The notes under the pieces were generated by a model. It made no database searches and was not told where the DNA came from. It was given only the letters and a program-made list of their open reading frames with translations. A stretch of DNA of 64,000 nucleotides, from positions 124,001-188,000 of the IMG/VR virus record IMGVR_UViG_3300043418_000114; one strand, given 5' to 3'. The translations under genes and the position numbers were made by a program. Positions 5,480 to 62,403 of this stretch are shown piece after piece (positions within the stretch are counted from its first letter, which is position 1; each line of letters starts with the position of its first letter).

Positions 5480-8184
5480 GCTACGTTGATGCCATTCATA
5501 GCAGGGATGAGGATCGCATCTACGTGGTAGAGCGTCAGTCAGATGGCCGACGCACCTACAATGAATTCCCTGCTAACTACGTTCTATACTACGACGATCC
5601 TAAAGGAAAGCAACGTAGCATCTTTAACACACCTGTATCTCGATTCAGTACCCGCAAGCGTAAAGAGTTTGAAACTGAAAAGAGAATTCACTCTAACAAG
5701 CAATTGTACGAGAGTGATGTTAACGTTGTGTTCCGTTGCCTAGCCGATAATTATTTAGGTGTTGATGCTCCAAAACTTCACACTTGCTTTTTCGACATTG
5801 AAGTAGACTTTGATCCTATCAAAGGGTTTAGTCCTACTAGTGATCCATTCAACCCTGTGACAGCTATCAGTTGTTATCTAGACTGGATGGACACTTGTTT
5901 CACGTTGGTTATTGCTCCAAAGCATATGACCAAAGAAACAGCAACTGAAATCATTGGTGAATTTGAGAATACAATCTTGTTTGACAACGAGAAGGACATG
6001 TTCGATGTGTTCTTTCAGTTAATCGAAGACGCCGACGTTCTAACAGGCTGGAACTCAGAAGGCTATGATATTCCATACATGGTCAATCGTGTTACACGTG
6101 TTATGTCTAAAGATGATACACGTAAATTCTGTTTGCTTGGACAACTTCCTAAGCCAAGAGAGTATGAACGTTTCGGTAAAGTCGAATTGACGTATGACTT
6201 AGTTGGTCGCATTCACCTAGACTATTTGCAACTCTACAAAAAGTATAACTATGAATCTCGTCATAGCTATAAGCTCGATGCCATCGGTGAGATGGAAGTC
6301 GGCGAGAACAAAACCCAATACGAGGGCACTCTTGATCAGTTATATAACAAAGACTTTAAAAAGTTTATTGAATATAACAGACAAGATACGATGTTGTTGG
6401 TTAAGATCCACAACAAATTGAAGTTCCTTGATCTAGCCAATGCGCTGGCTCATGAGAACACTGTATTGTTACCTACTGTAATGGGCTCCGTTGCCATGAT
6501 TGAAATGGCAATTTTAAACGAAGCTCATGAAAGAGGTTTAGTTGTTCCAGATAAAAAACGAAAGGTAGAAAATGCAGAAGACATTCAATCAGCGGCAGGT
6601 GCCTATGTTGCTACTCCCAAAAGGGGCCTCCACGAATGGGTTGGTGCAGTCGATATCAACTCACTCTACCCGTCAACGATCCGCGCTCTTAACATGGCAC
6701 CAGAGACCATCGTTGCACAAGTCAGACAAACACTTACCGATCAATACATGAGAGAACGCGGTGCCAAACTGGCCCGTGAAAAGAAGTATTACAAAGATGG
6801 TGACGATGACGTTACAGGCGCAATCTTGTGGGAAGGATTGTTTGGTGCTCTAGAGTACACAGCAATCATGAACCAAGAACGTGGTACTATCTTAACTGTA
6901 GACTACGAAGATGGTCGCAGTGTAGAAATGAGTGCCGCCGAGATTTGGAAGATGGTCTTTGATAGCCATAAGCCATGGATGTTAAGTGCAAACGGTACAA
7001 TTTTTACGTATGAGAAAGAGGGTGTAATTCCTGGTCTACTTACACGTTGGTATACTGAACGTAAATCAATTCAGAAACAGGCAAAAGAAGCGTATGGTAC
7101 TGATATGTATGAATACTATGACAAACGCCAGCTTGTTCGTAAGATTTTGCTTAACTCTGCATACGGCGCACTGTTGAATGAACATTGTCGTTTCTATGAT
7201 AAGCGCATTGGTCAATCAGTTACTCTATCTGGTCGTCAGATTGTTAAGCACATGATGAGTACAATCAATGAAACAGTTGAGGGTAAGTATACTCATGAAG
7301 GTGAAGCTATCGTTTATGGCGATACTGACTCATGTTACTTTAGTGCATATGCAACCTTAAAACCACAGATTGATGCGGGTGACTTAGAATGGAACAAAGA
7401 TATTTGTATTGGTCTCTATGACGGCATTGCTGATCAAGCTAACAATACTTTCCCTTCGTTCTTAGAGAAAGCGTTCCATGCTCCTCGCAAGAATGGTGAG
7501 ATCATCAAAGCTGGTCGTGAATTGATTGGTGATCGTAGTATCTTTATCACTAAGAAGCGTTATGCTATCAACATCTTTGACAAAGAAGGCAAGCGTAAAG
7601 ACAAAGACGGAGCATTGGGTGATATCAAAGCCATGGGTCTAGACTTGAAACGTGCAGATACTCCAAAGTATGTGCAAGAATTCTTGATGGATGTACTTGA
7701 AATGGTACTACAACGAGGCAAGGGTAGTGAAGAAGTCATTGAACGAGTGCGAGAATTTAAACGAGTTATGGTATCTCAAGATAGTTGGACAAAGGGTTCA
7801 CCTAAATCCGTTAACAACTTGACCAAGCATACACAAGCGTTTGAAAAGACTGGTACTTGTAAAGTGGGTCACGCACGTGCCGCTATTAACTGGAATTATT
7901 TGCGACGAGTCCATGGAGATAACTACTCTATGCAAATTGTAGACGGCATGAAGATTGTTGTTTGCAAACTCAAGCCAAATGCATTGGGTTTTAACTCAAT
8001 TGCATATCCAGTTGACGAACTCAGACTTCCAGAATGGTTTAAAGAATTGCCATTCGATGATGACGAGATGGAAAAGACACTGGTCGACGAAAAGATTGAT
8101 AACTTGTTAGGTGTTCTGAATTGGGACATTAAGAGTAATATCGACGTTAAATCGACATTCGCCGAATTGTTCTCATTCGGTTAA
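5476..8184 (+). CDS. Family B DNA polymerase (T4 gp43-like) with 3'-5' exonuclease
   Basis: FFDIEV, WNSEGYDIPY, YNRQD (Exo I-III); DINSLYPS, KILLNSAYG, YGDTDS. Confidence 0.97.
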   Translation: MSYVDAIHSRDEDRIYVVERQSDGRRTYNEFPANYVLYYDDPKGKQRSIFNTPVSRFSTRKRKEFETEKRIHSNKQLYESDVNVVFRCLADNYLGVDAPKLHTCFFDIEVDFDPIKGFSPTSDPFNPVTAISCYLDWMDTCFTLVIAPKHMTKETATEIIGEFENTILFDNEKDMFDVFFQLIEDADVLTGWNSEGYDIPYMVNRVTRVMSKDDTRKFCLLGQLPKPREYERFGKVELTYDLVGRIHLDYLQLYKKYNYESRHSYKLDAIGEMEVGENKTQYEGTLDQLYNKDFKKFIEYNRQDTMLLVKIHNKLKFLDLANALAHENTVLLPTVMGSVAMIEMAILNEAHERGLVVPDKKRKVENAEDIQSAAGAYVATPKRGLHEWVGAVDINSLYPSTIRALNMAPETIVAQVRQTLTDQYMRERGAKLAREKKYYKDGDDDVTGAILWEGLFGALEYTAIMNQERGTILTVDYEDGRSVEMSAAEIWKMVFDSHKPWMLSANGTIFTYEKEGVIPGLLTRWYTERKSIQKQAKEAYGTDMYEYYDKRQLVRKILLNSAYGALLNEHCRFYDKRIGQSVTLSGRQIVKHMMSTINETVEGKYTHEGEAIVYGDTDSCYFSAYATLKPQIDAGDLEWNKDICIGLYDGIADQANNTFPSFLEKAFHAPRKNGEIIKAGRELIGDRSIFITKKRYAINIFDKEGKRKDKDGALGDIKAMGLDLKRADTPKYVQEFLMDVLEMVLQRGKGSEEVIERVREFKRVMVSQDSWTKGSPKSVNNLTKHTQAFEKTGTCKVGHARAAINWNYLRRVHGDNYSMQIVDGMKIVVCKLKPNALGFNSIAYPVDELRLPEWFKELPFDDDEMEKTLVDEKIDNLLGVLNWDIKSNIDVKSTFAELFSFG

Positions 8185-54549: not shown

Positions 54550-54798
54550 ATGAATAGTTTTGAATCGATGATTGCTACCATCAAAGGTATCGAGAACTGG
54601 AATATGAGTAAGCAAAAGAAAACTATTACAAAAGCAGAGTATGAATTATTCTGTAAAGAATATGTTTTTGAGCAGATAAAAGGAATCAGTTTTGGACAGG
54701 CCTTTTGTAAAAGATTTAACATCGAAGATCATCTTATAAATAATGTCAGTAATGACACAGCCAAATTTCACATCGAAGCATTAGGATATATTAAGTGA
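54550..54798 (+). CDS. Hypothetical protein
   Basis: SFGQAFCKRF. Confidence 0.55.
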   Translation: MNSFESMIATIKGIENWNMSKQKKTITKAEYELFCKEYVFEQIKGISFGQAFCKRFNIEDHLINNVSNDTAKFHIEALGYIK

Positions 54799-55328
54799 AG
54801 CAAAAATACATAGACTATTACATGGACGTTGCAGAACGTACCGGTAAACTCAGCCACGCGATTCGCAGACAAGTGGGAGCCGTGATCGTCAAAGACAATC
54901 GCATTCTGTCATATGGCTACAATGGCATGCCAACTGGTTGGGACAACGAATGCGAGTACAAAGACTACATGAGTGGCGATGCTGGCGGTTGGCTCAATCC
55001 TGATGAAATTCAAGAACGTTGGCCAATCGTAGAGTATGATCCTTCGGTGCAAAGCAACAGACGATATCGTTTGGTAACCAAAGATGAAGTCTTACATGCA
55101 GAAAGCAACGCAATCGCTAAAGTGTCTGGTTCTACTGAGTCAAGTGAAGATGCTACACTATTTGTAACAACTGCACCTTGCATTCACTGTGCTAAGATGA
55201 TTTTTCAATCTGGCATCAGAAGCGTGTTCTACCGTGAAGCCTATCGAGATACGGCTGGAGTAGATTTCTTAACCAAAGGTGGAGTTAGTGTCACCCAATA
55301 CACAGCACAAGACAATAATAGTAATTGA
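54795..55328 (+). CDS. Deoxycytidylate deaminase
   Basis: VGAVIVKD, GYNG, HAESNAI, PCIHC zinc motif. Confidence 0.92.
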   Translation: MKQKYIDYYMDVAERTGKLSHAIRRQVGAVIVKDNRILSYGYNGMPTGWDNECEYKDYMSGDAGGWLNPDEIQERWPIVEYDPSVQSNRRYRLVTKDEVLHAESNAIAKVSGSTESSEDATLFVTTAPCIHCAKMIFQSGIRSVFYREAYRDTAGVDFLTKGGVSVTQYTAQDNNSN

Positions 55329-55488: not shown

Positions 55489-55757
55489 AATACTTTACAT
55501 TTAAACGTGAATCAAATGATTTTGATGATATACTAAAAGACACTATCATCAAGAAACTGTTCTCTATGAAACTTCAATGGAGAAATCACTTGATGGTAGG
55601 TATCAGTGAAGCTGGCAACGATGGCACATTTAGCTACATTACACTGAAATACGGCGATGATATGGTAACTGATATTGTCCCAGATCGTTCACCTGTTATA
55701 TACGTAGATTACTTGCCAAAGGGCAACGAAAACTACAAGGGCTCAGTATCTAAGTGA
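55485..55757 (+). CDS. Hypothetical protein
   Basis: Coupled ORF. Confidence 0.55.
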   Translation: MKYFTFKRESNDFDDILKDTIIKKLFSMKLQWRNHLMVGISEAGNDGTFSYITLKYGDDMVTDIVPDRSPVIYVDYLPKGNENYKGSVSK

Positions 55758-56492
55758 TATTAGGCGGGCTTCTGGAATACGAGTATGAGTATTCTTGCTA
55801 CCTAATAGAACGACTGTTCTAATTCCATTCTTGGTTGGTAACATCATCACGATGCATCCACCACTGCGATTAATAAATCCTGTCTTACTTACAACGAATG
55901 ATTGTAATCCAACGATGGGATTTGTGTTGTGAAATACTAGTTTAGATTTCTTAACAGGAACAACAATCAACGACTTGTTACTAGCTTGTACGATTGTTGA
56001 ATAAGAGCTTGCCGCTTGTACCATTTTAATCAAATCTTCTGCCGTACTGACATTCATCACAGATAATCCAGTTGGCTCGGCAAATTTCGTGTTAGGCATC
56101 TCTAGTGCGTATGCTTTTGAATTCATAGCATGTATACATGCAGAGAACCCGCCAGGATAATACTCACAGAGCAACCTAGCCGCTTTGTTGTCAGACTTAA
56201 CTATCGCCAAATCAATCAACGTTTGTCGTGTTTGTTCTTGGTTGTAGAGCTTTGTAGGAATAGTCTCGTCAAGCGGCTGGTTTGCATCCATGACAATCAT
56301 TACCGTCATTAATTTAGTGATGCTGGCGATAGAACGGACGGCTGTAGTATTGATGCCGTCTATTATTTTTCCTGATTCGTCAGCCACCAACCATGACTTA
56401 GCGGTAATCACTGGTTCATGTTGAACTTTGGCATTGCCCACCAGCGAAGTGAACAAAGCCGTGATCAACACGGTCTTTTTCAAAAAGTTCAT
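55743..56492 (-). CDS. pbpG: D-alanyl-D-alanine endopeptidase/carboxypeptidase (peptidase S11, PBP7-like)
   Basis: Signal peptide; ASITK (SxxK), SDN, KTG; EPTGLS..NVSTAEDL. Confidence 0.88.
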   Translation of the reverse strand: MNFLKKTVLITALFTSLVGNAKVQHEPVITAKSWLVADESGKIIDGINTTAVRSIASITKLMTVMIVMDANQPLDETIPTKLYNQEQTRQTLIDLAIVKSDNKAARLLCEYYPGGFSACIHAMNSKAYALEMPNTKFAEPTGLSVMNVSTAEDLIKMVQAASSYSTIVQASNKSLIVVPVKKSKLVFHNTNPIVGLQSFVVSKTGFINRSGGCIVMMLPTKNGIRTVVLLGSKNTHTRIPEARLISLRY

Positions 56493-56498
56493 TTGATT

Positions 56499-56533
56499 AT
56501 TGTATCATAGATATGCATTAGATTCAATGCATA
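56499..56533 (-). promoter_or_regulatory. sigma70 promoter of the PBP7-like gene with an 8-bp inverted repeat around -35
   Basis: TTGAAT-N17-TACAAT on -; TATGCATT-N6-AATGCATA at 56512-56533. Confidence 0.6.
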
Positions 56534-56538
56534 CGGTG

Positions 56539-56560
56539 AAAAGCCCCCGAAGGGGCTTTT
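56539..56560 (-). terminator. Rho-independent terminator (UUCG tetraloop)
   Basis: AAAAGCCCC-TTCG-GGGGCTTTT on the - strand after the DUF4337-like gene. Confidence 0.85.
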
Positions 56561-56561
56561 A

Positions 56562-57107
56562 TTAGAACCAGAGCCAGATGCCCTGACTTAACAGTAATAC
56601 ACCTATAACAGCAACCACTTCGCTGATTTTGTACATTTTGTTGTTGACTGCTAGAATAGAAGCTGATAACAACACAATAGCTAATTGGAATGCCATGCTT
56701 GCGAACGTTAGCCATGGAGAGTGCTTTGCCGCATCGTCACGTGCCTTTTCAAATGCCTGTGCTTTTGCCAACAACTCTTTCTTGCCTTCGCCTTTTTCTG
56801 GATCACTTTCGTAACGAGCAATCTTAGCATCTAACTTTTCAGCCTTTGCTTTGTCACCACGGGCAACATAGTCGTCACGCTGACCTTCTGCAATAGCTTG
56901 CTTGATAGATTTAGACTGAAAGAAAGCGTATGTATCAGTTGCTTTCAGGGTATTCTTCAATATTGCACCACTATAAGTGTTTGCAAAGTATGTAGTGATT
57001 GCCATGAACAATGCCATGATAACGATTACTAAGCCCGCTTTGTCTTTGATTTGTGCTTCACGCTCGGAACGTGATAATGGTTTGGTTTCTTGTTTTAGTT
57101 CTGCCAT
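56562..57107 (-). CDS. DUF4337-like membrane protein
   Basis: KATDTYAFFQSKSIK, RYESDP, AFQLAIVLLSASIL; ATAAATA at 57126-57120. Confidence 0.7.
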   Translation of the reverse strand: MAELKQETKPLSRSEREAQIKDKAGLVIVIMALFMAITTYFANTYSGAILKNTLKATDTYAFFQSKSIKQAIAEGQRDDYVARGDKAKAEKLDAKIARYESDPEKGEGKKELLAKAQAFEKARDDAAKHSPWLTFASMAFQLAIVLLSASILAVNNKMYKISEVVAVIGVLLLSQGIWLWF

Positions 57108-57126
57108 TTTTTTCTCCTATATTTAT

Positions 57127-57300
57127 TTAGTGTAAGTGCTTTGCGTACCACTTGAGGAAAACATATAATATTCCTAAAGATACTGCAAATAACATGAAAA
57201 AGAACGAATTGACTATGAGCATGGATACTAGAGTTCCCTGTTCAAGTAGCCACCACCATAGATAATCGTATTGTTCTTTGATTTCTTTAAATATTTTCAT
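57127..57300 (-). CDS. Small membrane protein
   Basis: MKIFKEIKEQYDYLWWW... one long TM. Confidence 0.5.
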   Translation of the reverse strand: MKIFKEIKEQYDYLWWWLLEQGTLVSMLIVNSFFFMLFAVSLGILYVFLKWYAKHLH

Positions 57301-57301
57301 C

Positions 57302-58084
57302 TTATCTTCCAACGTACTTTTTAGGTAGTGCTTCAAGTTTGCGTTGTTCTTCTGTTTTTGGTATCCAATCGTCTCCATACTGTGGATACTTTCGAATTCT
57401 GTCTTCTACTACCATTGCCAATGCAAGTCCTATACCTGCGGCTAACATTACTGCACCTATTCCCCAGGCTGCCTCTACCCAGATCGTTTCAATGCGTTTC
57501 TTTCGCTTCATGGATCTGATATGCTGATTCTTCATTTGTTGTTGAATCAACACACGCTGGGTAGCACCCATCTTCTGCATCATTGCCTCAACCTCAGTGT
57601 AGAGCGCACCCAACTCAGGAGGACTTTGATATACCATTAACTCTCTCAAGTCAACACTCATTTGTTCTAGTTGCTTACGCATTAAAACACGCTGGAGGGC
57701 ACGTTTGCCCAGGGATGCATCACCCGTATAAACTTCTGTTTCCGCTCGGCGCTCCTCTTCCTCGAAGACGGCCATGCACTTATAGAAGTTATCGTAGTAT
57801 GTGCCTAAGTGATCACCGATTTCTTGGTAGATGCCTTGATGTGCGCCTTCATTGGCTTTCTTGTTGAGTTCTCTGACACGTTCCTTTTCTTCTAAGAACT
57901 GTCGCTTTTGCTCATTGGTTGCTGGTTTCTCAGGTGGATGTAGCTTATGAAACTGGTCGTCTAAATCTTTAAGAACTTCCTTGACTTCGCCAGCCGCACC
58001 TTTAATGTCCTTGTATAGTTTGCACCCAGCTTTGACTGCCGAAACAGCCCCATTGGCTAGAGCAAAGAGCGTTAGCGGATCCAT
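57302..58084 (-). CDS. Helical late protein with C-terminal TM
   Basis: MDPLTLFALANGAVSAVKAG...; TATAAATA at 58127-58120. Confidence 0.7.
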   Translation of the reverse strand: MDPLTLFALANGAVSAVKAGCKLYKDIKGAAGEVKEVLKDLDDQFHKLHPPEKPATNEQKRQFLEEKERVRELNKKANEGAHQGIYQEIGDHLGTYYDNFYKCMAVFEEEERRAETEVYTGDASLGKRALQRVLMRKQLEQMSVDLRELMVYQSPPELGALYTEVEAMMQKMGATQRVLIQQQMKNQHIRSMKRKKRIETIWVEAAWGIGAVMLAAGIGLALAMVVEDRIRKYPQYGDDWIPKTEEQRKLEALPKKYVGR

Positions 58085-58211
58085 CCCAACAAAATCCTTT
58101 ATTTATTATAGTTATCATCTATTTATAAAAAAGTTAGACTTTTTTGATTGGATTATTTGATAAATATCAATGTCAACATCTTAGACAATAACAATAATAA
58201 TAAAGGAATAG

Positions 58212-59246
58212 ATGATGAAGAAGACAATTTTGGCGCTGGCCATGATGGCTGGCCTCGGCGCGTATGCCCAAACCTCTCCTACCCTAATCAATCAGGGAAC
58301 CTACGATAGCAAGACTTTGGTAGATACTAATAGCACTTCCAATAGTGCTAGTTCAGTTACTACCAACAACACAAGTGTGAGTACCAGTACAAACACAAGT
58401 GCTAGTACGGTAAATAGCACTAGTGTAAACACGAACAACAACGTGAACAGTGGTACAATTACGTATAACAACAATAACGTATCCAGTGGCTCATTGACTA
58501 ACATAAATCAGAATACCAATAACGGTACGATGACTTATAACAACAATAATGCCATGAGTGGTTCAGTGACGTATAACAATAACAACGTGCAGTCTGGCAC
58601 ATTGACGAATAACAACAATAACGTCAATACCACTACAGCAACCACGGTTAATACAAACAACAACATTAACTCAGGAACACAAACGTTCAACAATAACAAC
58701 GTCAGTACCGCAGTTAATACCAATAACAACGTCAACACTGGCACCATGACGTACAACAATAACAATGCTAGTACCAGTTCTAACACCAACGTGAATCAGA
58801 ACAATAATAATAGTACTAGCACTGCTACAAACGTCAATCAGAATATTCAAAGCGGTTCGTTAACTAACAACAATAACAACGTTAGTAAGATTGACCAGAC
58901 ACTACATCAGCCACCTCCAACAGCTATCGCTCCAGCGATGATGAGCATGGGCACTGATTTGTGCGTTACCGGTGTTAGTGGCGCAACACAAACTCAAATC
59001 TTTGGCTTGAGCTTTGGCTCTACCATGCGTGATGCGAACTGTGAACGACTAAAGCTATCAAAGACTTTATTCGACATGGGCATGAAGGTGGCGGCAGTTG
59101 CCACAATGTGTCAAGATCGCCGTATCTGGGATGCTATGATGCAAGCTGGCACACCTTGCCCATATGAAGGCAAGATTGGTGAGCAAGCACGTGAAGCATG
59201 GGAAGCAAACCCTAAAAAGATTCCTACTATCGGCTTGAAAGAGTAA
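58212..59246 (+). CDS. Exported Asn/Thr-rich repeat protein with Cys-containing C-terminal domain
   Basis: Signal peptide; 12-aa repeats SGTITYNNNNVS; PPTAIAP...DLC...NCERLKLS...MCQD...GTPCP; ATAAATA at 58160. Confidence 0.8.
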   Translation: MMKKTILALAMMAGLGAYAQTSPTLINQGTYDSKTLVDTNSTSNSASSVTTNNTSVSTSTNTSASTVNSTSVNTNNNVNSGTITYNNNNVSSGSLTNINQNTNNGTMTYNNNNAMSGSVTYNNNNVQSGTLTNNNNNVNTTTATTVNTNNNINSGTQTFNNNNVSTAVNTNNNVNTGTMTYNNNNASTSSNTNVNQNNNNSTSTATNVNQNIQSGSLTNNNNNVSKIDQTLHQPPPTAIAPAMMSMGTDLCVTGVSGATQTQIFGLSFGSTMRDANCERLKLSKTLFDMGMKVAAVATMCQDRRIWDAMMQAGTPCPYEGKIGEQAREAWEANPKKIPTIGLKE

Positions 59247-59247
59247 G

Positions 59248-61134
59248 ATGAAGGGACTAGTACTCGGCTTGATGTTATTGAGCAATTCAGTTTTTGCTCA
59301 ATACATACAAAACGTGGGTATGATTGATGGTGCTACTGGTAACTTAGTATACACCTCTGTCAATCCACCACCTCCTGGCGCCGATCCAGTTACTTGGTCT
59401 GGCTTTACGGGCACAACTTCAACTGGTGGCGGATACAGCGGCGGCTATATGCCAGGATACAATTCAACCACTGGCACCTTCATGTTTGGTTATAGTAGAG
59501 GAACTATAGCGTATTCGACTCCAGTTAACTATGCATTAGCAATGGCCGGTACAAATATTCAGGTGAATGGGTTTAAGTATTCTTGGGAGTATATTAACCA
59601 AGACTACAGCAGAGGAACACTTAGTGGTAATATTAACTTGACTAGCAACACTGGTCAAGTATTGCAGAACTACAACTATAATATGCCACAGACAACTGCT
59701 GGCTGGACAACAATGAGTGGCATAGAAAACTTCAACACTCAGTATGCCGCATCATCATTGGGCCGTCTAAATGTCAGTTTCACTGGCAAAGATGATAGAT
59801 TCTGGGCTGGTTACTATGGTCCACAAATTAGAGATATCGATGTGAAGTTGTTATATAGCGTTGCACCTCCTCCTGTGCCAACGGACTTTCTAAAGTGGGT
59901 TCCTCTTACAAATGAAAACGGAGAGTTCACACTTACTAAGCCAGGTGTGGTTCGCTACGGTGCTAATGATGTGTATGTTTATCATGAATTTCAAGCTGGC
60001 ACGTATAGCTGTACTAACAGTGCTTGGGGCATTGATCCACTTAGTGGTGTTGGCAAATCTTGTTCACTAGGCACAAACACATCCACAACAACTACTCCCA
60101 CAGTTACTAAGACTACCACAACTGATACTTACACTAGTGGTGTGACATTGTTGGAACCAGTAACAACTGCATCGACACCTACTACCACAACGGTAGCAAC
60201 ACCGACAGTAGATTCTACATCCTTGCCAACTAGTTCCGCACCACAAACAAGTGTGATTAGTGCGGTTGTTTCTGCACCAGCACCGACTACTTCAACGAGT
60301 ACAACGACTGCAAGTACCTCAACCATATCGAGTACACAGAGTTCAAAAGAATCAAGTGGGTCAAGTGGTTCAACTAGTTTGGCACTAAGCATTATCAGTA
60401 AGAACAATGAACGTGATGCCGCTGGATCAGCAGTTGCACAATCAGCAATGGCACAAGCACAACAGGCGGCAACTCAAGCACAACAGGATGCCGCTAATGT
60501 AGCATCAAACGCAGTGTCAAACAGCGTGAGTGCTAACGCAGTGTCAATTGGTGGTCAGCAATCAACTGGTAATGGAATCAGAGCTACATCAAGTGGTAGT
60601 TCATCTGTATTGGCGTCGAACGCTTCCTTGTCTATTGGCACAACAGGAACTGCACAGCAACTAGTAATATCACAACAGCCTGGCACTACTTCTGTTATTA
60701 ACACAACAACACAAAGCGCAACTGCACAGACAGCATCCGCATATACACAGCAGAACGTTAGCACGACAATGCAAACGCAAGAGACTTACGTGTTGGTTCA
60801 ACCTAATACACTAACTGACAGAACAAACCCACTGACCGATATCGTTGAGGGTAAACAATCCGTTCCTCAAAGTAATTCAGTGGGAATGACAGGCCCTGCA
60901 GTGAATAAAAATGCACAGGACAATGACATTGCAGGTGGCGTATCTATCAACAAAATGGCTACTGCGCCTAATGGATACGGAGACTACTTAAACTTTACTA
61001 TGCGTGATGTTGCATTCTACGCACCAAAGGAAGTTTACAAGAATCAACGTAACGTTGATAACCAACGTGCATTGCGTACACTAACCAGTGACAGCAAGCA
61101 CAGAGAAATGGTGGAGATGCAATATGCTAAATGA
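59248..61134 (+). CDS. Exported multidomain protein with lectin-like Cys domain and Thr/Ser-rich stalk
   Basis: Signal peptide; VRYGA...CTNSAWGIDPLSGVGKSC; long T/S/A/Q low-complexity region. Confidence 0.75.
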   Translation: MKGLVLGLMLLSNSVFAQYIQNVGMIDGATGNLVYTSVNPPPPGADPVTWSGFTGTTSTGGGYSGGYMPGYNSTTGTFMFGYSRGTIAYSTPVNYALAMAGTNIQVNGFKYSWEYINQDYSRGTLSGNINLTSNTGQVLQNYNYNMPQTTAGWTTMSGIENFNTQYAASSLGRLNVSFTGKDDRFWAGYYGPQIRDIDVKLLYSVAPPPVPTDFLKWVPLTNENGEFTLTKPGVVRYGANDVYVYHEFQAGTYSCTNSAWGIDPLSGVGKSCSLGTNTSTTTTPTVTKTTTTDTYTSGVTLLEPVTTASTPTTTTVATPTVDSTSLPTSSAPQTSVISAVVSAPAPTTSTSTTTASTSTISSTQSSKESSGSSGSTSLALSIISKNNERDAAGSAVAQSAMAQAQQAATQAQQDAANVASNAVSNSVSANAVSIGGQQSTGNGIRATSSGSSSVLASNASLSIGTTGTAQQLVISQQPGTTSVINTTTQSATAQTASAYTQQNVSTTMQTQETYVLVQPNTLTDRTNPLTDIVEGKQSVPQSNSVGMTGPAVNKNAQDNDIAGGVSINKMATAPNGYGDYLNFTMRDVAFYAPKEVYKNQRNVDNQRALRTLTSDSKHREMVEMQYAK

Positions 61135-61266
61135 GATTATTAATTGGAATACAACTGCAATGATTATCGTCGCAGTGTTGAGTATACATGCCGGAATCAA
61201 ACTAATAAACCGAATGTTTGAAAACCTAGGCAAGAAAAAGAATTCATTATTTTAAAGGAAGTGAAT

Positions 61267-61833
61267 ATGTCAGAAGAAATTAAAGACTTAAACAGTCAAG
61301 TCGATAAACTAGAGGAAGCCGCTAAGAAGTATGCGAGTAAAGATACAGTCATTAGCATTGGTGGTTATGAGTTTACGCCAGCAAAGTTAATGGTTGCATT
61401 CACAATTGTGTCTTCAACTCTCGGCGGGCTTTATGGATGTTTTGAGGTCTACAAAGACTACACAAGCATGAAAAAACACATCGCGGAATACGTTGCACCT
61501 GATCTATCTGTATTTGATAAACGTTTAGCCGTTATCGAAGAAAATAGCCAGAAGTCAACTGACTACACCCGTGATATCAAAAACGATTTAAAGAACGATA
61601 TCCGTCGTTTGGAAGGAGTAGTTGAGAATGTAGAACGTAGTCAAAAACAAACTGCTAGAGAAACGGATGTTGCAGTGCGTGAAGTTCAAACCGAAGTGCG
61701 TAATACAACTCGCAGTGTCGAACAGGAACTACGTAAGAACACCCGTGAGATGGAACAGTCAGTAAAGAACATACAAAGAGAAGTTGACCAAAAAATCAAA
61801 CAGGCTATTGACAATCCACTAGCAAACAAGTAA
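61267..61833 (+). CDS. TM plus coiled-coil protein
   Basis: Single TM, then heptad repeats ending AIDNPLANK. Confidence 0.7.
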   Translation: MSEEIKDLNSQVDKLEEAAKKYASKDTVISIGGYEFTPAKLMVAFTIVSSTLGGLYGCFEVYKDYTSMKKHIAEYVAPDLSVFDKRLAVIEENSQKSTDYTRDIKNDLKNDIRRLEGVVENVERSQKQTARETDVAVREVQTEVRNTTRSVEQELRKNTREMEQSVKNIQREVDQKIKQAIDNPLANK

Positions 61834-61842
61834 AATGATTGA

Positions 61843-62403
61843 ATGAAAATCACAGAACTTGAAAAGAAAATGCCCCATCTGTATCTTGATATGGATGGGG
61901 TTCAAGCTGACTTCTTTGGTGCATGGGCTGACAAGCATAACGTTAGTCACTGGAGAGCTATCCAGGACAAAGAAGGTGAAATCGAAGAACTGGCAAACAG
62001 TACACCAGAACAAGTCTACGATTTCTTCCGCAAGCTAAAACCACTACCAGGTGGACAACTAATTATCAATTGGTTGAAAGAAAACAAAATCCCCTTTACC
62101 GTACTGAGTGCTCCTCTACGGGGCCCATACGCCGATGTTAGTAAGCAAGCCAAACGTGATTGGTTAGATGAACATAATCCAGGTACTAGCGAAGATGCTA
62201 TCTTTACTAGCGGCAAGCAAAAGTACGCAGTGACAGATGGTGTTGCTAATGTACTAGTTGACGATTTTGGACCCTATATCCAAAAATGGACAGATGCTGG
62301 CGGCATACCCGTCAAGCATGAGGATGAATCAGAAGTTGCAAGTGCCGCTGAGGACACTATTGAGAAACTAGAAAAGATTTATTCTCCTTATCTAAAACGA
62401 TAA
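61843..62403 (+). CDS. HAD-family 5'(3')-deoxyribonucleotidase-like protein
   Basis: YLDMDGV.ADF, VLSAP, LVDDF. Confidence 0.8.
   Translation: MKITELEKKMPHLYLDMDGVQADFFGAWADKHNVSHWRAIQDKEGEIEELANSTPEQVYDFFRKLKPLPGGQLIINWLKENKIPFTVLSAPLRGPYADVSKQAKRDWLDEHNPGTSEDAIFTSGKQKYAVTDGVANVLVDDFGPYIQKWTDAGGIPVKHEDESEVASAAEDTIEKLEKIYSPYLKR

What the first reader, a model, noticed from the sequence alone, without database searches (positions are those of the whole stretch)
58160..61833. Late operon of exported proteins: 12-residue Asn-ladder repeat protein, lectin-like stalk protein and coiled-coil anchor
Seen: both large proteins have Sec-type signal peptides despite late expression. The first has a regular 12-aa period (SGTITYNNNNVS / SGSLTNINQNTN / NGTMTYNNNNAM / SGSVTYNNNNVQ / SGTLTNNNNNVN) with varied codons, so selection is at protein level. 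The second has a Cys domain (C.N..WG.DP..G..K.C) resembling SUEL-type lectins, plus a mucin-like stalk. Inference: a beta-solenoid or functional amyloid (curli- or ice-binding-like) surface structure exported by infected cells, affecting aggregation, grazing or progeny retention, rather than a normal virion fibre.
Basis: partly seen in the sequence, partly recalled or inferred. Interest (0 to 1): 0.6.

Follow-up and report, generated by a model that had tools for sequence, protein, structure and literature searches.

The report
Conserved phage envelope gene triad near lysis genes
The three genes are real and are one copy of a very widespread, virus-only set of two exported proteins plus a membrane-anchored coiled coil that usually sits beside phage lysis genes. 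It looks more like an unstudied cell-envelope or lysis device than an amyloid or ice-binding surface fibre.

Summary
Observation confirmed. Three co-oriented ORFs (344, 628 and 190 aa) lie at 58212-61833. The first two have Sec-type N-termini. The first has a significant 12-residue Asn/Thr/Ser period encoded with varied codons. A GATAAATA late-promoter-like motif lies upstream.

Interpretation only partly supported. AlphaFold2 gives the Asn repeat no structure (pLDDT 26-39). The tract varies greatly in length and is missing from pelagiphage homologues. The 364-kb phage genome has no curli machinery. The Cys module does not match the SUEL-lectin model. Instead it matches a module in adhesion proteins of Gram-positive phages. 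The N-terminal domain of protein 2 is a confident carbohydrate-binding-module-like beta-sandwich.

The conserved parts are small C-terminal domains of proteins 1 and 2, and protein 3 (TM, coiled coil, C-terminal NPL). In 60 viral loci with enough flank, 57 have gene 2 directly after gene 1 and 50 have all three. The triad occurs in podo-, myo- and jumbo phages of aquatic bacteria, including HTVC023P. It is virus-only and has no named relatives. It repeatedly lies next to endolysins or at the T7 lysis position.

Best reading (about 0.35): a periplasm-spanning, spanin-like lysis or envelope complex with variable spacers. Function is unproven.

The parts
58158..58166 (+). TGATAAATA, a T4-type late-promoter-like motif 45 nt upstream of P0001
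   Evidence: The motif is strongly enriched upstream of gene starts genome-wide (58 of 92 copies) and precedes virion genes. An identical contig in an RNA library starts at 58184, but contigs cannot show a transcript start.
58212..59246 (+). P0001, 344 aa: signal peptide (aa 1-19), Asn/Thr/Ser-rich 12-residue repeat spacer (about aa 44-232), Pro-rich hinge, and a conserved 4-Cys helical C-terminal domain (aa 233-342)
   Evidence: phrog_20531 (unknown function), 1.5e-14.
58341..58907 (+). Repeat tract of P0001, read here as a variable low-complexity spacer
   Evidence: Period 12 with z about 7. pLDDT 26-39 with no secondary structure. Length varies among homologues and strains.
58908..59237 (+). 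Conserved C-terminal domain of P0001 (virus-only family)
   Evidence: 50-57% identical to hypothetical proteins of Pelagibacter phages HTVC115P, HTVC023P, HTVC202P and Mosig. 1447 clusters at 50% identity. No informative Pfam fusions and no PDB sequence match. Atlas clusters are 83-100% viral.
59248..61134 (+). P0002, 628 aa: signal peptide (1-17), beta-sandwich (about 25-210), small 2-Cys beta module (216-276), Thr/Ser-rich disordered linker (277-375), long helix (377-429), low-complexity region, and a conserved C-terminal segment (about 560-628, ending MVEMQY)
59320..59877 (+). Galactose-binding-domain-like / CBM-like beta-sandwich of P0002
   Evidence: pLDDT above 90. Z 12.3 to the Fbs1/Fbs2 sugar-binding domains. 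Z 9-10 to CBM16 and to CBM-like domains of phage tailspikes and tail fibres.
59893..60075 (+). Small Cys module of P0002 (Cys255, Cys272)
   Evidence: 47-51% identity over 55 aa to modules in Lactococcus Ceduovirus AdpB (present there twice in tandem) and in Streptococcus prophage tail-fibre proteins. No SUEL-lectin Pfam hit. Present in only 10 of 80 related loci.
60925..61131 (+). Conserved C-terminal segment of P0002 (FYxPKEIY...VDNxRxLR...MVxQQY)
   Evidence: Nearly invariant columns in 120 homologues. Recognisable in HTVC115P gp53. Found directly downstream of the P0001-like gene in 57 of 60 loci.
61124..61255 (+). Possible small ORF (43 aa, one TM segment, basic tail) in the P0002-P0003 gap
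   Evidence: No relatives in the 80 loci. Its status is uncertain.
61261..61833 (+). P0003, 190 aa: about 42-aa N-terminal part, TM segment (43-63), APDLS motif, long coiled-coil-like C-terminal part, and a conserved C-terminal NPL motif
   Evidence: 66% identical to the equivalent gene of a 166-kb freshwater phage. Shorter versions occur in HTVC115P gp49, HTVC202P gp26, Baldr, Mosig and HTVC023P gp48.
55743..58084 (-). Divergent neighbouring operon: 260-aa C-terminally anchored protein (57302-58084), 83-aa TM protein (57127-57378), DUF4337 membrane protein (56562-57107), and a Sec-signal Peptidase_S11 D-Ala-D-Ala carboxy/endopeptidase (55743-56492)
   Evidence: Pfam hits and TM segments. The same genes follow the triad on one strand in L006 and L014. 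DUF4337 is 61% identical to the L006 copy. ATAAATA motifs precede the 260-aa and DUF4337 genes. S11 lies within 6 kb in 7 of 80 loci and DUF4337 in 9 of 80.

Best explanation
The three genes are one instance of a conserved, virus-only triad that works in the host periplasm late in infection. P0003 is a type-II inner-membrane protein whose coiled coil reaches into the periplasm. P0001 and P0002 are Sec-exported. Each consists of a variable, largely disordered spacer, plus carbohydrate-binding-like heads in P0002, ending in a small conserved domain. I propose that the conserved C-terminal parts dock on each other or on the NPL end of P0003. The P0002 head would hold peptidoglycan or the inner face of the outer membrane. 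The assembly would then span the periplasm and act at the outer-membrane or cell-wall step of lysis, as a lipoprotein-free analogue of a two-component spanin. Shown: the gene set, its conservation, export-type N-termini, folds, synteny with lysis genes, and a late-type promoter motif. Inferred: topology, complex formation, glycan binding and the role in lysis.
For: Triad conservation: of 60 IMG/VR loci with at least 4 kb downstream, 57 carry the P0002 C-terminal motif gene directly after the P0001-like gene, 53 carry a P0003-like gene, and 50 carry both. It occurs in podoviruses (HTVC115P, HTVC023P, HTVC033P, HTVC202P, Baldr), myoviruses (Mosig, L006) and jumbo phages (window, L014). Lysis linkage: a peptidase M15 gene lies immediately after the P0003-like gene in HTVC023P. 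Lysozyme lies within 2-4 genes in HTVC033P, CRP-810, CRP-207 and MW202481 and within 2 kb of the last triad gene found in two IMG/VR contigs. The triad sits between the tail fibre and TerL, the T7 lysis-gene position, in a T7-like pelagiphage and directly before TerL in HTVC202P and Baldr. In the window and its close relatives it sits beside a Sec-signal Peptidase_S11, while the genome lacks Phage_lysozyme, SLT, Peptidase_M15_4 and Amidase_2. P0003 has the i-spanin architecture (N-terminal TM plus coiled coil plus conserved C-terminus), and no lipobox ORF was found in or near the cassette in five loci. Spacers are disordered and vary in length and composition. A late-type promoter motif is present. 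Identical contigs over parts of all three genes occur in an independent freshwater metatranscriptome library.
Against: There is no experimental or homology link to any lysis protein. PHROG hits for P0001 and P0003 have unknown function, P0002 has none, and no Pfam or NCBIfam match reaches the curated cut-off. In Mosig, L006 and HTVC115P no endolysin is annotated next to the triad. S11 is within 6 kb in only 7 of 80 loci. Only four endolysin families were tested in the own genome. Synteny counts come from related phages and are not independent. The P0003 topology rests on a weak positive-inside argument. A CBM-like fold does not show glycan binding. RNA-library contigs may come from contaminating DNA. 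No signal-peptide predictor was run.
Confidence: 0.35

Rival explanations
1. Extracellular adhesive or matrix proteins. P0001 and P0002 are oxidised in the periplasm and reach the outside by an unknown route or at lysis. They then stick to glycans on cells or debris, causing aggregation, progeny retention or receptor masking. The Asn repeats provide amyloid-like or glue-like cohesion.
For: P0002 has a CBM-like head plus a module shared with phage adhesion proteins. It has mucin-like Thr/Ser linkers and P0001 has Asn-rich, prion-like composition. Four conserved Cys in P0001 and two in the P0002 module suggest disulfide formation in the periplasm. The curli-based 'sibling capture' proposed for pelagiphages shows the concept exists (PMC9599517). 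AlphaFold2 cannot model cross-beta amyloid, so low pLDDT does not exclude it.
Against: There is no secretion system for outer-membrane passage, and CsgG and CsgF are absent. The repeat tract is dispensable in many homologues and the P0002 linker is acidic rather than Thr/Ser-rich in pelagiphages. This idea does not explain the strictly co-inherited membrane-anchored P0003. No solenoid is predicted.
Confidence: 0.2
2. Envelope remodelling for superinfection exclusion or receptor masking. The triad, with the S11 peptidase and the membrane proteins, would alter the periplasm or cell wall so that later phages cannot deliver DNA.
For: All products are envelope-targeted. In large phages the triad neighbours a periplasmic DD-peptidase and several small membrane proteins. 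The heads and spacers diversify fast, as expected in an arms race.
Against: Exclusion genes are usually early and phage-lineage specific. Here a late-type promoter motif is present, and the same conserved C-terminal domains are shared by phages of very different hosts. There are no real hits to defence-system models: only weak coiled-coil matches of P0003 to ZorA tails.
Confidence: 0.15
3. Lysis-timing control. P0003 would be a class-III-like holin with a periplasmic domain, and P0001 and P0002 would be periplasmic antiholin or sensor proteins, analogous to T4 T and RI.
For: P0003 has the same topology class as T4 holin T (short cytoplasmic N-terminus, one TM, larger periplasmic part). The partners are exported. 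The triad is found in T4-like phages (L006, Mosig). It lies beside endolysins.
Against: The P0003 periplasmic part is a long charged coiled coil, unlike the globular domain of T. It has no similarity to any holin family. Proteins of 600 or more residues with glycan-binding-like heads are unlike any known antiholin.
Confidence: 0.1
4. Virion parts (fibres or decoration) whose hydrophobic N-termini are not cleaved.
For: The CBM-like head and the small module resemble domains of tail fibres and tailspikes. In some podoviruses the triad lies between tail-fibre and terminase genes.
Against: Sec-type N-termini are conserved across many homologues. One partner is a membrane-anchored protein. In myoviruses and jumbo phages the triad lies among replication and nucleotide-metabolism genes, not structural ones. 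More than half of each protein is disordered.
Confidence: 0.05

Closest known systems
Two-component spanins (lambda Rz/Rz1)
   Same: An inner-membrane type-II protein with a periplasmic coiled coil and a conserved C-terminus (P0003). Exported partner(s) are encoded next to it. The location is beside endolysin genes. Expression is probably late.
   Different: The partners are not small outer-membrane lipoproteins. They have no lipobox and are 150-900-aa SPI-type proteins with glycan-binding-like heads and long spacers. There are three components rather than two. There is no sequence similarity. Membrane fusion has not been shown.
Curli / type VIII secretion (CsgA/B, CsgG, CsgF), including the pelagiphage T8SS cluster (PMC9599517)
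   Same: Sec-exported, Asn/Gln/Ser-rich repeat protein encoded by aquatic phages. A role in aggregation has been proposed.
   Different: There are no curlin repeats and no CsgG or CsgF in the genome. The repeat unit is 12 aa, versus roughly 20 aa in CsgA (from general knowledge). The repeats are dispensable in homologues. It is a different gene set from the published viral T8SS.
12-residue beta-solenoid antifreeze protein (Tenebrio TmAFP) and ice-nucleation repeats
   Same: Regular 12-residue period rich in Thr, Ser and Asn.
   Different: TmAFP coils are held by a disulfide in every turn (from general knowledge), whereas the P0001 repeats have no Cys. AlphaFold2 predicts no solenoid. Unit number and sequence drift freely.
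SUEL-type (D-galactoside/L-rhamnose-binding) lectin domain, Pfam PF02140
   Same: A short motif resembling ...C.N..(F/W)G.DP..G..K.C. One structurally similar viral protein in BFVD is named as containing a SUEL lectin domain (rank 3).
   Different: No Pfam hit of any kind (so none to PF02140) at E<=5 for the module, and none at E<=0.01 in 60 homologues. The module is about 55 aa with 2 Cys, whereas SUEL domains are about 95 aa with several disulfides (from general knowledge).
Carbohydrate-binding modules of the galactose-binding-domain-like fold (Fbs1 FBA domain, CBM16, CBM4, CBM22, CBM27) and CBM-like heads of phage tailspikes
   Same: The fold of P0002 residues 25-210 (Z 12.3 to 2e33 and 8zuh; Z about 10 to 5w6h, 2zew and 7xyc). 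Pelagiphage equivalents are annotated as carbohydrate-binding-domain proteins.
   Different: Sequence identity is 9-17% and there is no Pfam CBM hit. The ligand is unknown. The domain is attached to a Sec signal and a C-terminal docking segment rather than to an enzyme or a fibre.
Adhesion protein B (AdpB) of Lactococcus Ceduovirus and Streptococcus prophage tail-fibre proteins
   Same: About 55-aa module, 47-51% identical, E 4e-8 to 6e-6 in the database search and 2e-15 pairwise. It is present twice in tandem in AdpB.
   Different: Those proteins are virion adhesion-device parts of Gram-positive phages, and the AdpB copies lack the two Cys. In P0002 the module is optional: 10 of 80 loci have it.

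Membership tests
Curli / T8SS system | CsgG outer-membrane channel (PF03783) encoded with the fibre subunit | tested here: not met
   No match in the complete 364-kb genome, while the control genomes gave matches.
Curli / T8SS system | CsgF (PF10614) and curlin repeats (PF07012) | tested here: not met
   No match in the own genome. P0001 has no Pfam hit.
Functional amyloid | Cross-beta fibre formation (ThT or Congo red binding, fibre diffraction) | not testable with these tools
   AlphaFold2 gives no structure for the repeats, but it cannot model amyloid.
Beta-solenoid ice-binding / antifreeze proteins | Repeats stack into a regular solenoid with a flat Thr/Asn ladder face | tested here: not met
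   pLDDT 26-39 and no strands across residues 37-229 with a 51-sequence alignment. Repeat number is not conserved.
SUEL-type lectin (PF02140) | Match to the family profile over the roughly 95-aa Cys-rich domain | tested here: not met
   No Pfam family at E<=5 for residues 205-285. None in 61 family members.
Carbohydrate-binding module (galactose-binding-domain-like fold) | Beta-sandwich jelly-roll fold | tested here: met
   pLDDT above 90. Z 12.3, rmsd 3.1-3.4 A over 151-157 residues to Fbs1/Fbs2. Many CBMs at Z 8-10.
Carbohydrate-binding module (galactose-binding-domain-like fold) | Demonstrated glycan binding, or membership of a CAZy/Pfam CBM family by sequence | tested here: not met
   No Pfam or NCBIfam hit. 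Binding itself cannot be tested here.
Two-component spanin | i-spanin: N-terminal TM domain, periplasmic coiled coil, 100-200 aa, encoded in the lysis cassette | tested here: inconclusive
   The architecture fits and endolysin adjacency is seen in 7 small-phage loci. The window protein has an extra 42-aa N-terminal part. Topology is not shown. There is no sequence match to annotated spanin PHROGs.
Two-component spanin | o-spanin: small outer-membrane lipoprotein with a lipobox, embedded in, overlapping or adjacent to the i-spanin gene | tested here: not met
   No lipobox ORF of 25-160 aa in or near the cassette in five loci. Lipobox in 0 of 120 P0001 and 2 of 119 P0002 homologues.
Mu releasin (DUF2730, PF10805) | Match to PF10805 | tested here: not met
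   One database record labels the short protein after the P0002-like gene DUF2730. No such hit at E<=1 for it, for six other short P0003-position proteins, or for P0003.
Sec/SPI-exported proteins | Cleavable N-terminal signal peptide | tested here: inconclusive
   Rule-based features are present and conserved in homologues. No SignalP-type predictor and no N-terminal sequencing.

The most novel reading that the evidence does not exclude
The triad is a previously unrecognised, lipoprotein-free class of outer-membrane-disruption (spanin-equivalent) system. It would be used by a large share of aquatic phages, including the most abundant pelagiphage group. A glycan-binding exported protein and a Cys-rich adaptor would link an inner-membrane coiled coil to the wall or outer membrane.
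Probability: 0.2. Interest if true: 0.8.

Novelty: new variant of a known kind. Interest (0 to 1): 0.55.

Why it matters
The lysis machinery of marine and freshwater phages, including T4-like pelagi- and cyanophages and the HTVC023P-type podoviruses, is largely unannotated. A three-gene envelope cassette stands out: it has 1447 clusters at 50% identity for one component and at least 8000 relatives for another, and it is shared across podo-, myo- and jumbo phages. It is a concrete candidate for the missing outer-membrane or cell-wall step, or else for a new infected-cell envelope function. It also gives a clear domain map for experiments: conserved docking ends versus variable heads and spacers. 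And it shows that the eye-catching Asn repeat is probably only a spacer.

Tried and rejected
- Nucleotide search of the phage collection found nothing.
- Pfam, NCBIfam and PADLOC gave no meaningful family for P0001 to P0003. They returned only sub-threshold coiled-coil noise for P0003.
- A Pfam scan of 150 diverse P0001-domain proteins for domain fusions gave nothing informative. A profile search against PDB sequences gave no hit.
- A fold search with the low-confidence P0001 model gave no match.
- A three-chain complex prediction was run with the P0002 C-terminus, the P0003 periplasmic part and the P0001 C-domain. It returned 'no answer' (score 0.00). This is neither support nor evidence against binding.
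- The sigma-70 promoter and terminator scan was no better than shuffles.
- A scan of bacterial and archaeal genomes found only 15 short MAG contigs from scattered taxa, so it gave no host and no prophage context.
- The DUF2730/releasin lead from a database label was not reproduced.
- The idea that the triad is the published pelagiphage curli cluster was rejected.
- Atlas look-alike searches returned only unnamed viral clusters.

Full report
**Setting.** The window is bases 124001-188000 of a 364,247-bp IMG/VR virus record with direct terminal repeats, estimated complete. This is a jumbo phage from fresh water. The nucleotide search found no close relative in the annotated phage collection.

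**The observation.** Three co-oriented ORFs are present:
- P0001: 58212-59246, 344 aa.
- P0002: 59248-61134, 628 aa, starting one base after the P0001 stop.
- P0003: 61261-61833, 190 aa.

P0001 and P0002 begin with typical Sec/SPI-type N-termini (AYA|Q and VFA|Q). A simple rule-based test finds such N-termini in 72 of 111 P0001 homologues and 75 of 115 P0002 homologues. It finds none in 117 P0003 homologues, and lipoboxes are essentially absent. No dedicated predictor was available, so cleavage is inferred.

The 12-residue period in P0001 residues 76-232 is real. Identity autocorrelation peaks at lags 12, 24 and 36 with z about 7 against 500 shuffles. At DNA level Tandem Repeats Finder sees only one 66-nt x2 repeat, and the units use mixed Asn, Thr and Ser codons.

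The Cys motif (Cys255 and Cys272 of P0002), the Thr/Ser-rich stretch, and the TM-plus-coiled-coil build of P0003 are all present.

**Is it late?** ATAAATA occurs 92 times in the genome. Of these, 58 lie 8-90 nt upstream of a same-strand gene start, although only about 8% of the genome is non-coding. The extended consensus is (T)GATAAATA. This resembles the T4-type late promoter TATAAATA (general knowledge).

Copies of the motif precede a gp6-like baseplate wedge gene (PHROG E 3e-261), a tail-fibre-like gene and a virion structural gene. A perfect TGATAAATA lies at 58158-58166, 45 nt before P0001. Further copies precede the divergent 260-aa gene and the DUF4337 gene.

An independent freshwater metatranscriptome library holds contigs identical to parts of all three genes. 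DNA carry-over cannot be excluded, and contigs cannot show transcript starts. 'Late operon' is therefore plausible but was not measured.

**What the proteins are made of.**

*P0001.* AlphaFold2 with 51 homologues gives a mean pLDDT of 42. Residues 37-229 score 26-39 with no secondary structure. Only three C-terminal helices (277-332) reach about 70.

*P0002.* AlphaFold2 with 120 homologues models residues 30-280 at pLDDT above 90. This part is a beta-sandwich followed by a small beta module. It is followed by a disordered Thr/Ser linker (287-375), one long helix (377-429), more disorder, and short C-terminal helices.

The sandwich matches the sugar-binding domains of Fbs1 and Fbs2 (Z 12.3, about 155 residues, rmsd 3.1-3.4 A). 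It also matches CBM16, CBM4, CBM27 and the CBM-like domains of phage tailspikes and tail fibres. That is a shared fold, not a shown function.

The small Cys module (216-276) is 47-51% identical over 55 residues to a module in Lactococcus Ceduovirus adhesion protein B, where it occurs twice in tandem and without the Cys. It also matches Streptococcus prophage tail-fibre proteins. It gives no Pfam SUEL/Gal_Lectin hit even at E<=5, and neither do 60 homologues. One structurally similar BFVD entry is named as a SUEL-lectin-domain protein, but that could not be checked here.

**What is conserved.** The repeats and linkers are not the conserved parts. Three features are:
- The 110-residue, 4-Cys C-terminal domain of P0001. 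It is 50-57% identical to hypothetical proteins of Pelagibacter phages HTVC115P, HTVC023P, HTVC202P and Mosig. It has more than 1700 hits in the word search and 1447 clusters at 50% identity in the exhaustive search.
- The last roughly 70 residues of P0002 (FYxPKEIY...VDNxRxLR...MVxQQY), which are nearly invariant in 120 homologues and recognisable in HTVC115P gp53.
- P0003 as a whole, with at least 8000 relatives. It keeps a TM segment, an APDLS motif, a coiled coil and a C-terminal NPL motif even in the 108-142-aa pelagiphage versions.

The Asn-rich tract is kept as a compositional type in close homologues, but its length and unit sequence drift. It is absent from HTVC115P gp54, where the domain starts at residue 38. 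P0001-type proteins range from 125 to 526 aa. A co-occurring strain shows apparent length differences inside the tract. In pelagiphages the P0002 linker is Glu-rich rather than Thr/Ser-rich, and the head is a different CBM-like domain. Database records call these proteins 'carbohydrate binding domain containing'.

**A triad, and where it sits.** Profiles of the conserved parts were searched against 80 IMG/VR loci carrying the P0001 domain. Sixty of these loci have at least 4 kb downstream. Of those, 57 have the P0002 C-terminal motif gene directly downstream, 53 have a P0003-like gene, and 50 have both. The window-type head occurs in 32 of the 80 loci and the Cys module in only 10.

The family is virus-only:
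- Atlas clusters are 83-100% viral.
- Among 150 diverse members there are no informative Pfam fusions.
- There is no PDB sequence match.
- In one genome per each of 185,579 prokaryote species there are only 15 hits, all on short MAG contigs of scattered taxa. These are most simply mis-binned phage DNA.

Context repeatedly points to lysis:
- In HTVC023P the P0003-like gp48 is followed directly by a peptidase M15 gene.
- Lysozyme lies within 2-4 genes in HTVC033P, CRP-810, CRP-207 and MW202481.
- Lysozyme lies within 2 kb of the last triad gene found in two IMG/VR contigs.
- In a T7-like pelagiphage the triad fills the slot between the tail fibre and TerL, where T7 keeps its holin and spanin genes (general knowledge). 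In HTVC202P and Baldr it lies directly before TerL.

In the window, in a 166-kb freshwater myovirus (L006) and in a 307-kb phage (L014), the triad is joined to further envelope genes. These are a C-terminally anchored protein of 162-260 aa, small TM proteins, in the window and L006 a DUF4337 membrane protein, and a Sec-signal Peptidase_S11 DD-peptidase. In the window they form the divergent operon at 55743-58084. That extension is not universal. S11 is within 6 kb in 7 of 80 loci and DUF4337 in 9 of 80.

The window's genome has no match to Phage_lysozyme, SLT, Peptidase_M15_4 or Amidase_2. The S11 enzyme is therefore the only cell-wall hydrolase recognised so far, but only four families were tested. 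No lipobox-bearing small ORF, the hallmark of an o-spanin, lies in or near the cassette in five loci.

**Most likely mechanism.**

*Shown:*
- Two exported-type proteins and one membrane protein are inherited together across very different phages.
- Their conserved parts are short C-terminal domains.
- Their variable parts are disordered spacers and glycan-binding-like heads.
- The set tends to sit in or next to lysis cassettes and carries a late-type promoter motif.

*Inferred:*
- P0003 is anchored in the inner membrane with its coiled coil in the periplasm.
- The conserved ends of P0001 and P0002 dock to each other or to the P0003 NPL end.
- The P0002 head holds peptidoglycan or the outer membrane.
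- The assembly spans the periplasm and acts at the last step of lysis, as a lipoprotein-free spanin analogue.

I put this at about 0.35. The rivals are:
- Adhesive or aggregating proteins that act outside the cell (0.2).
- Envelope remodelling or superinfection exclusion (0.15).
- A holin/antiholin-like timing device (0.1).
- Virion parts (0.05).

The remainder is left for something not thought of. The one complex prediction allowed returned no answer and counts for nothing either way.

The specific proposals are not supported:
- A beta-solenoid is not predicted.
- The curli machinery is absent. The curli cluster known from pelagiphages is a different gene set of CsgA/B, CsgF and CsgG with FecR, histidine kinase and adenylate cyclase (PMC9599517).
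- SUEL-lectin membership fails the profile test.

Amyloid formation cannot be excluded by computation.

**Novelty.** None of the three families has a name or a described function in Pfam, NCBIfam, PHROGs, PADLOC, the PDB or the papers searched. I did not find the triad described as a unit. By architecture and context I file it as a new variant of phage lysis or envelope accessory systems. If the spanin-equivalent reading holds, it would be a new class.

**Limits.**
- Synteny counts come from related phages and are not independent.
- Most metagenomic contigs are fragments.
- Topology, cleavage, binding and timing are all untested.

Noticed in passing
whole genome G000; in the window at 58160 (+) and at 57126, 58106, 58126 (-): A (T)GATAAATA motif behaves as a genome-wide promoter element. 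58 of 92 ATAAATA copies lie 8-90 nt upstream of same-strand gene starts, including before the baseplate wedge gene, a tail-fibre-like gene and a virion structural gene. It also lies before dCMP deaminase (54795).
   Followed up: partly
window 55743-56492 (-): A Sec-signal Peptidase_S11 (D-Ala-D-Ala carboxy/endopeptidase, Pfam E 1e-35) is encoded by the phage. The complete genome has no match to Phage_lysozyme, SLT, Peptidase_M15_4 or Amidase_2, so this enzyme may be the phage's wall hydrolase.
   Followed up: partly
window 56562-58084 (-): A DUF4337 membrane protein, an 83-aa TM protein and a 260-aa C-terminally anchored protein form a divergent operon. The same genes travel with the triad in some large phages (L006, L014). 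Their function is unknown.
   Followed up: partly
window 61124-61255 (+): A possible 43-aa single-TM ORF with a basic tail fills the gap between P0002 and P0003. It has no relatives among 80 related loci.
   Followed up: partly
window 58550-58863: Contigs of a related strain in another freshwater metagenome (run X4) skip 262-312 nt inside the Asn-repeat tract. This suggests the tract differs in length between closely related strains, though such joints in repeats at 90% likeness can also come from other organisms.
   Followed up: no
window 58184-58854 and other pieces up to 62500: A freshwater metatranscriptome library from an independent study holds contigs identical to parts of P0001, P0002, P0003 and their neighbours. 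The first contig starts 18 nt after the GATAAATA motif. This is suggestive only, because contigs cannot show RNA ends and DNA may be present in the library.
   Followed up: partly
L110-L124 (genome contigs): All 15 hits to the P0001 domain in the species-representative genome set are short MAG contigs. They are assigned to unrelated taxa (Actinomycetota, Polynucleobacter, Bacteroidota, Melainabacteria, even a Methanobacteriota archaeon). These are probably phage contigs mis-binned into MAGs.
   Followed up: no
window 54795-55328, 61843-62403: The triad is flanked by nucleotide-metabolism genes (dCMP deaminase and an NT5C-type 5'(3')-deoxyribonucleotidase), not by structural genes.
   Followed up: no
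L019 (AP013540.1) 5722-5946: The database record labels the 74-aa protein after the P0002-like gene as DUF2730, the Mu releasin family. The Pfam scan here does not reproduce that label.
   Followed up: yes
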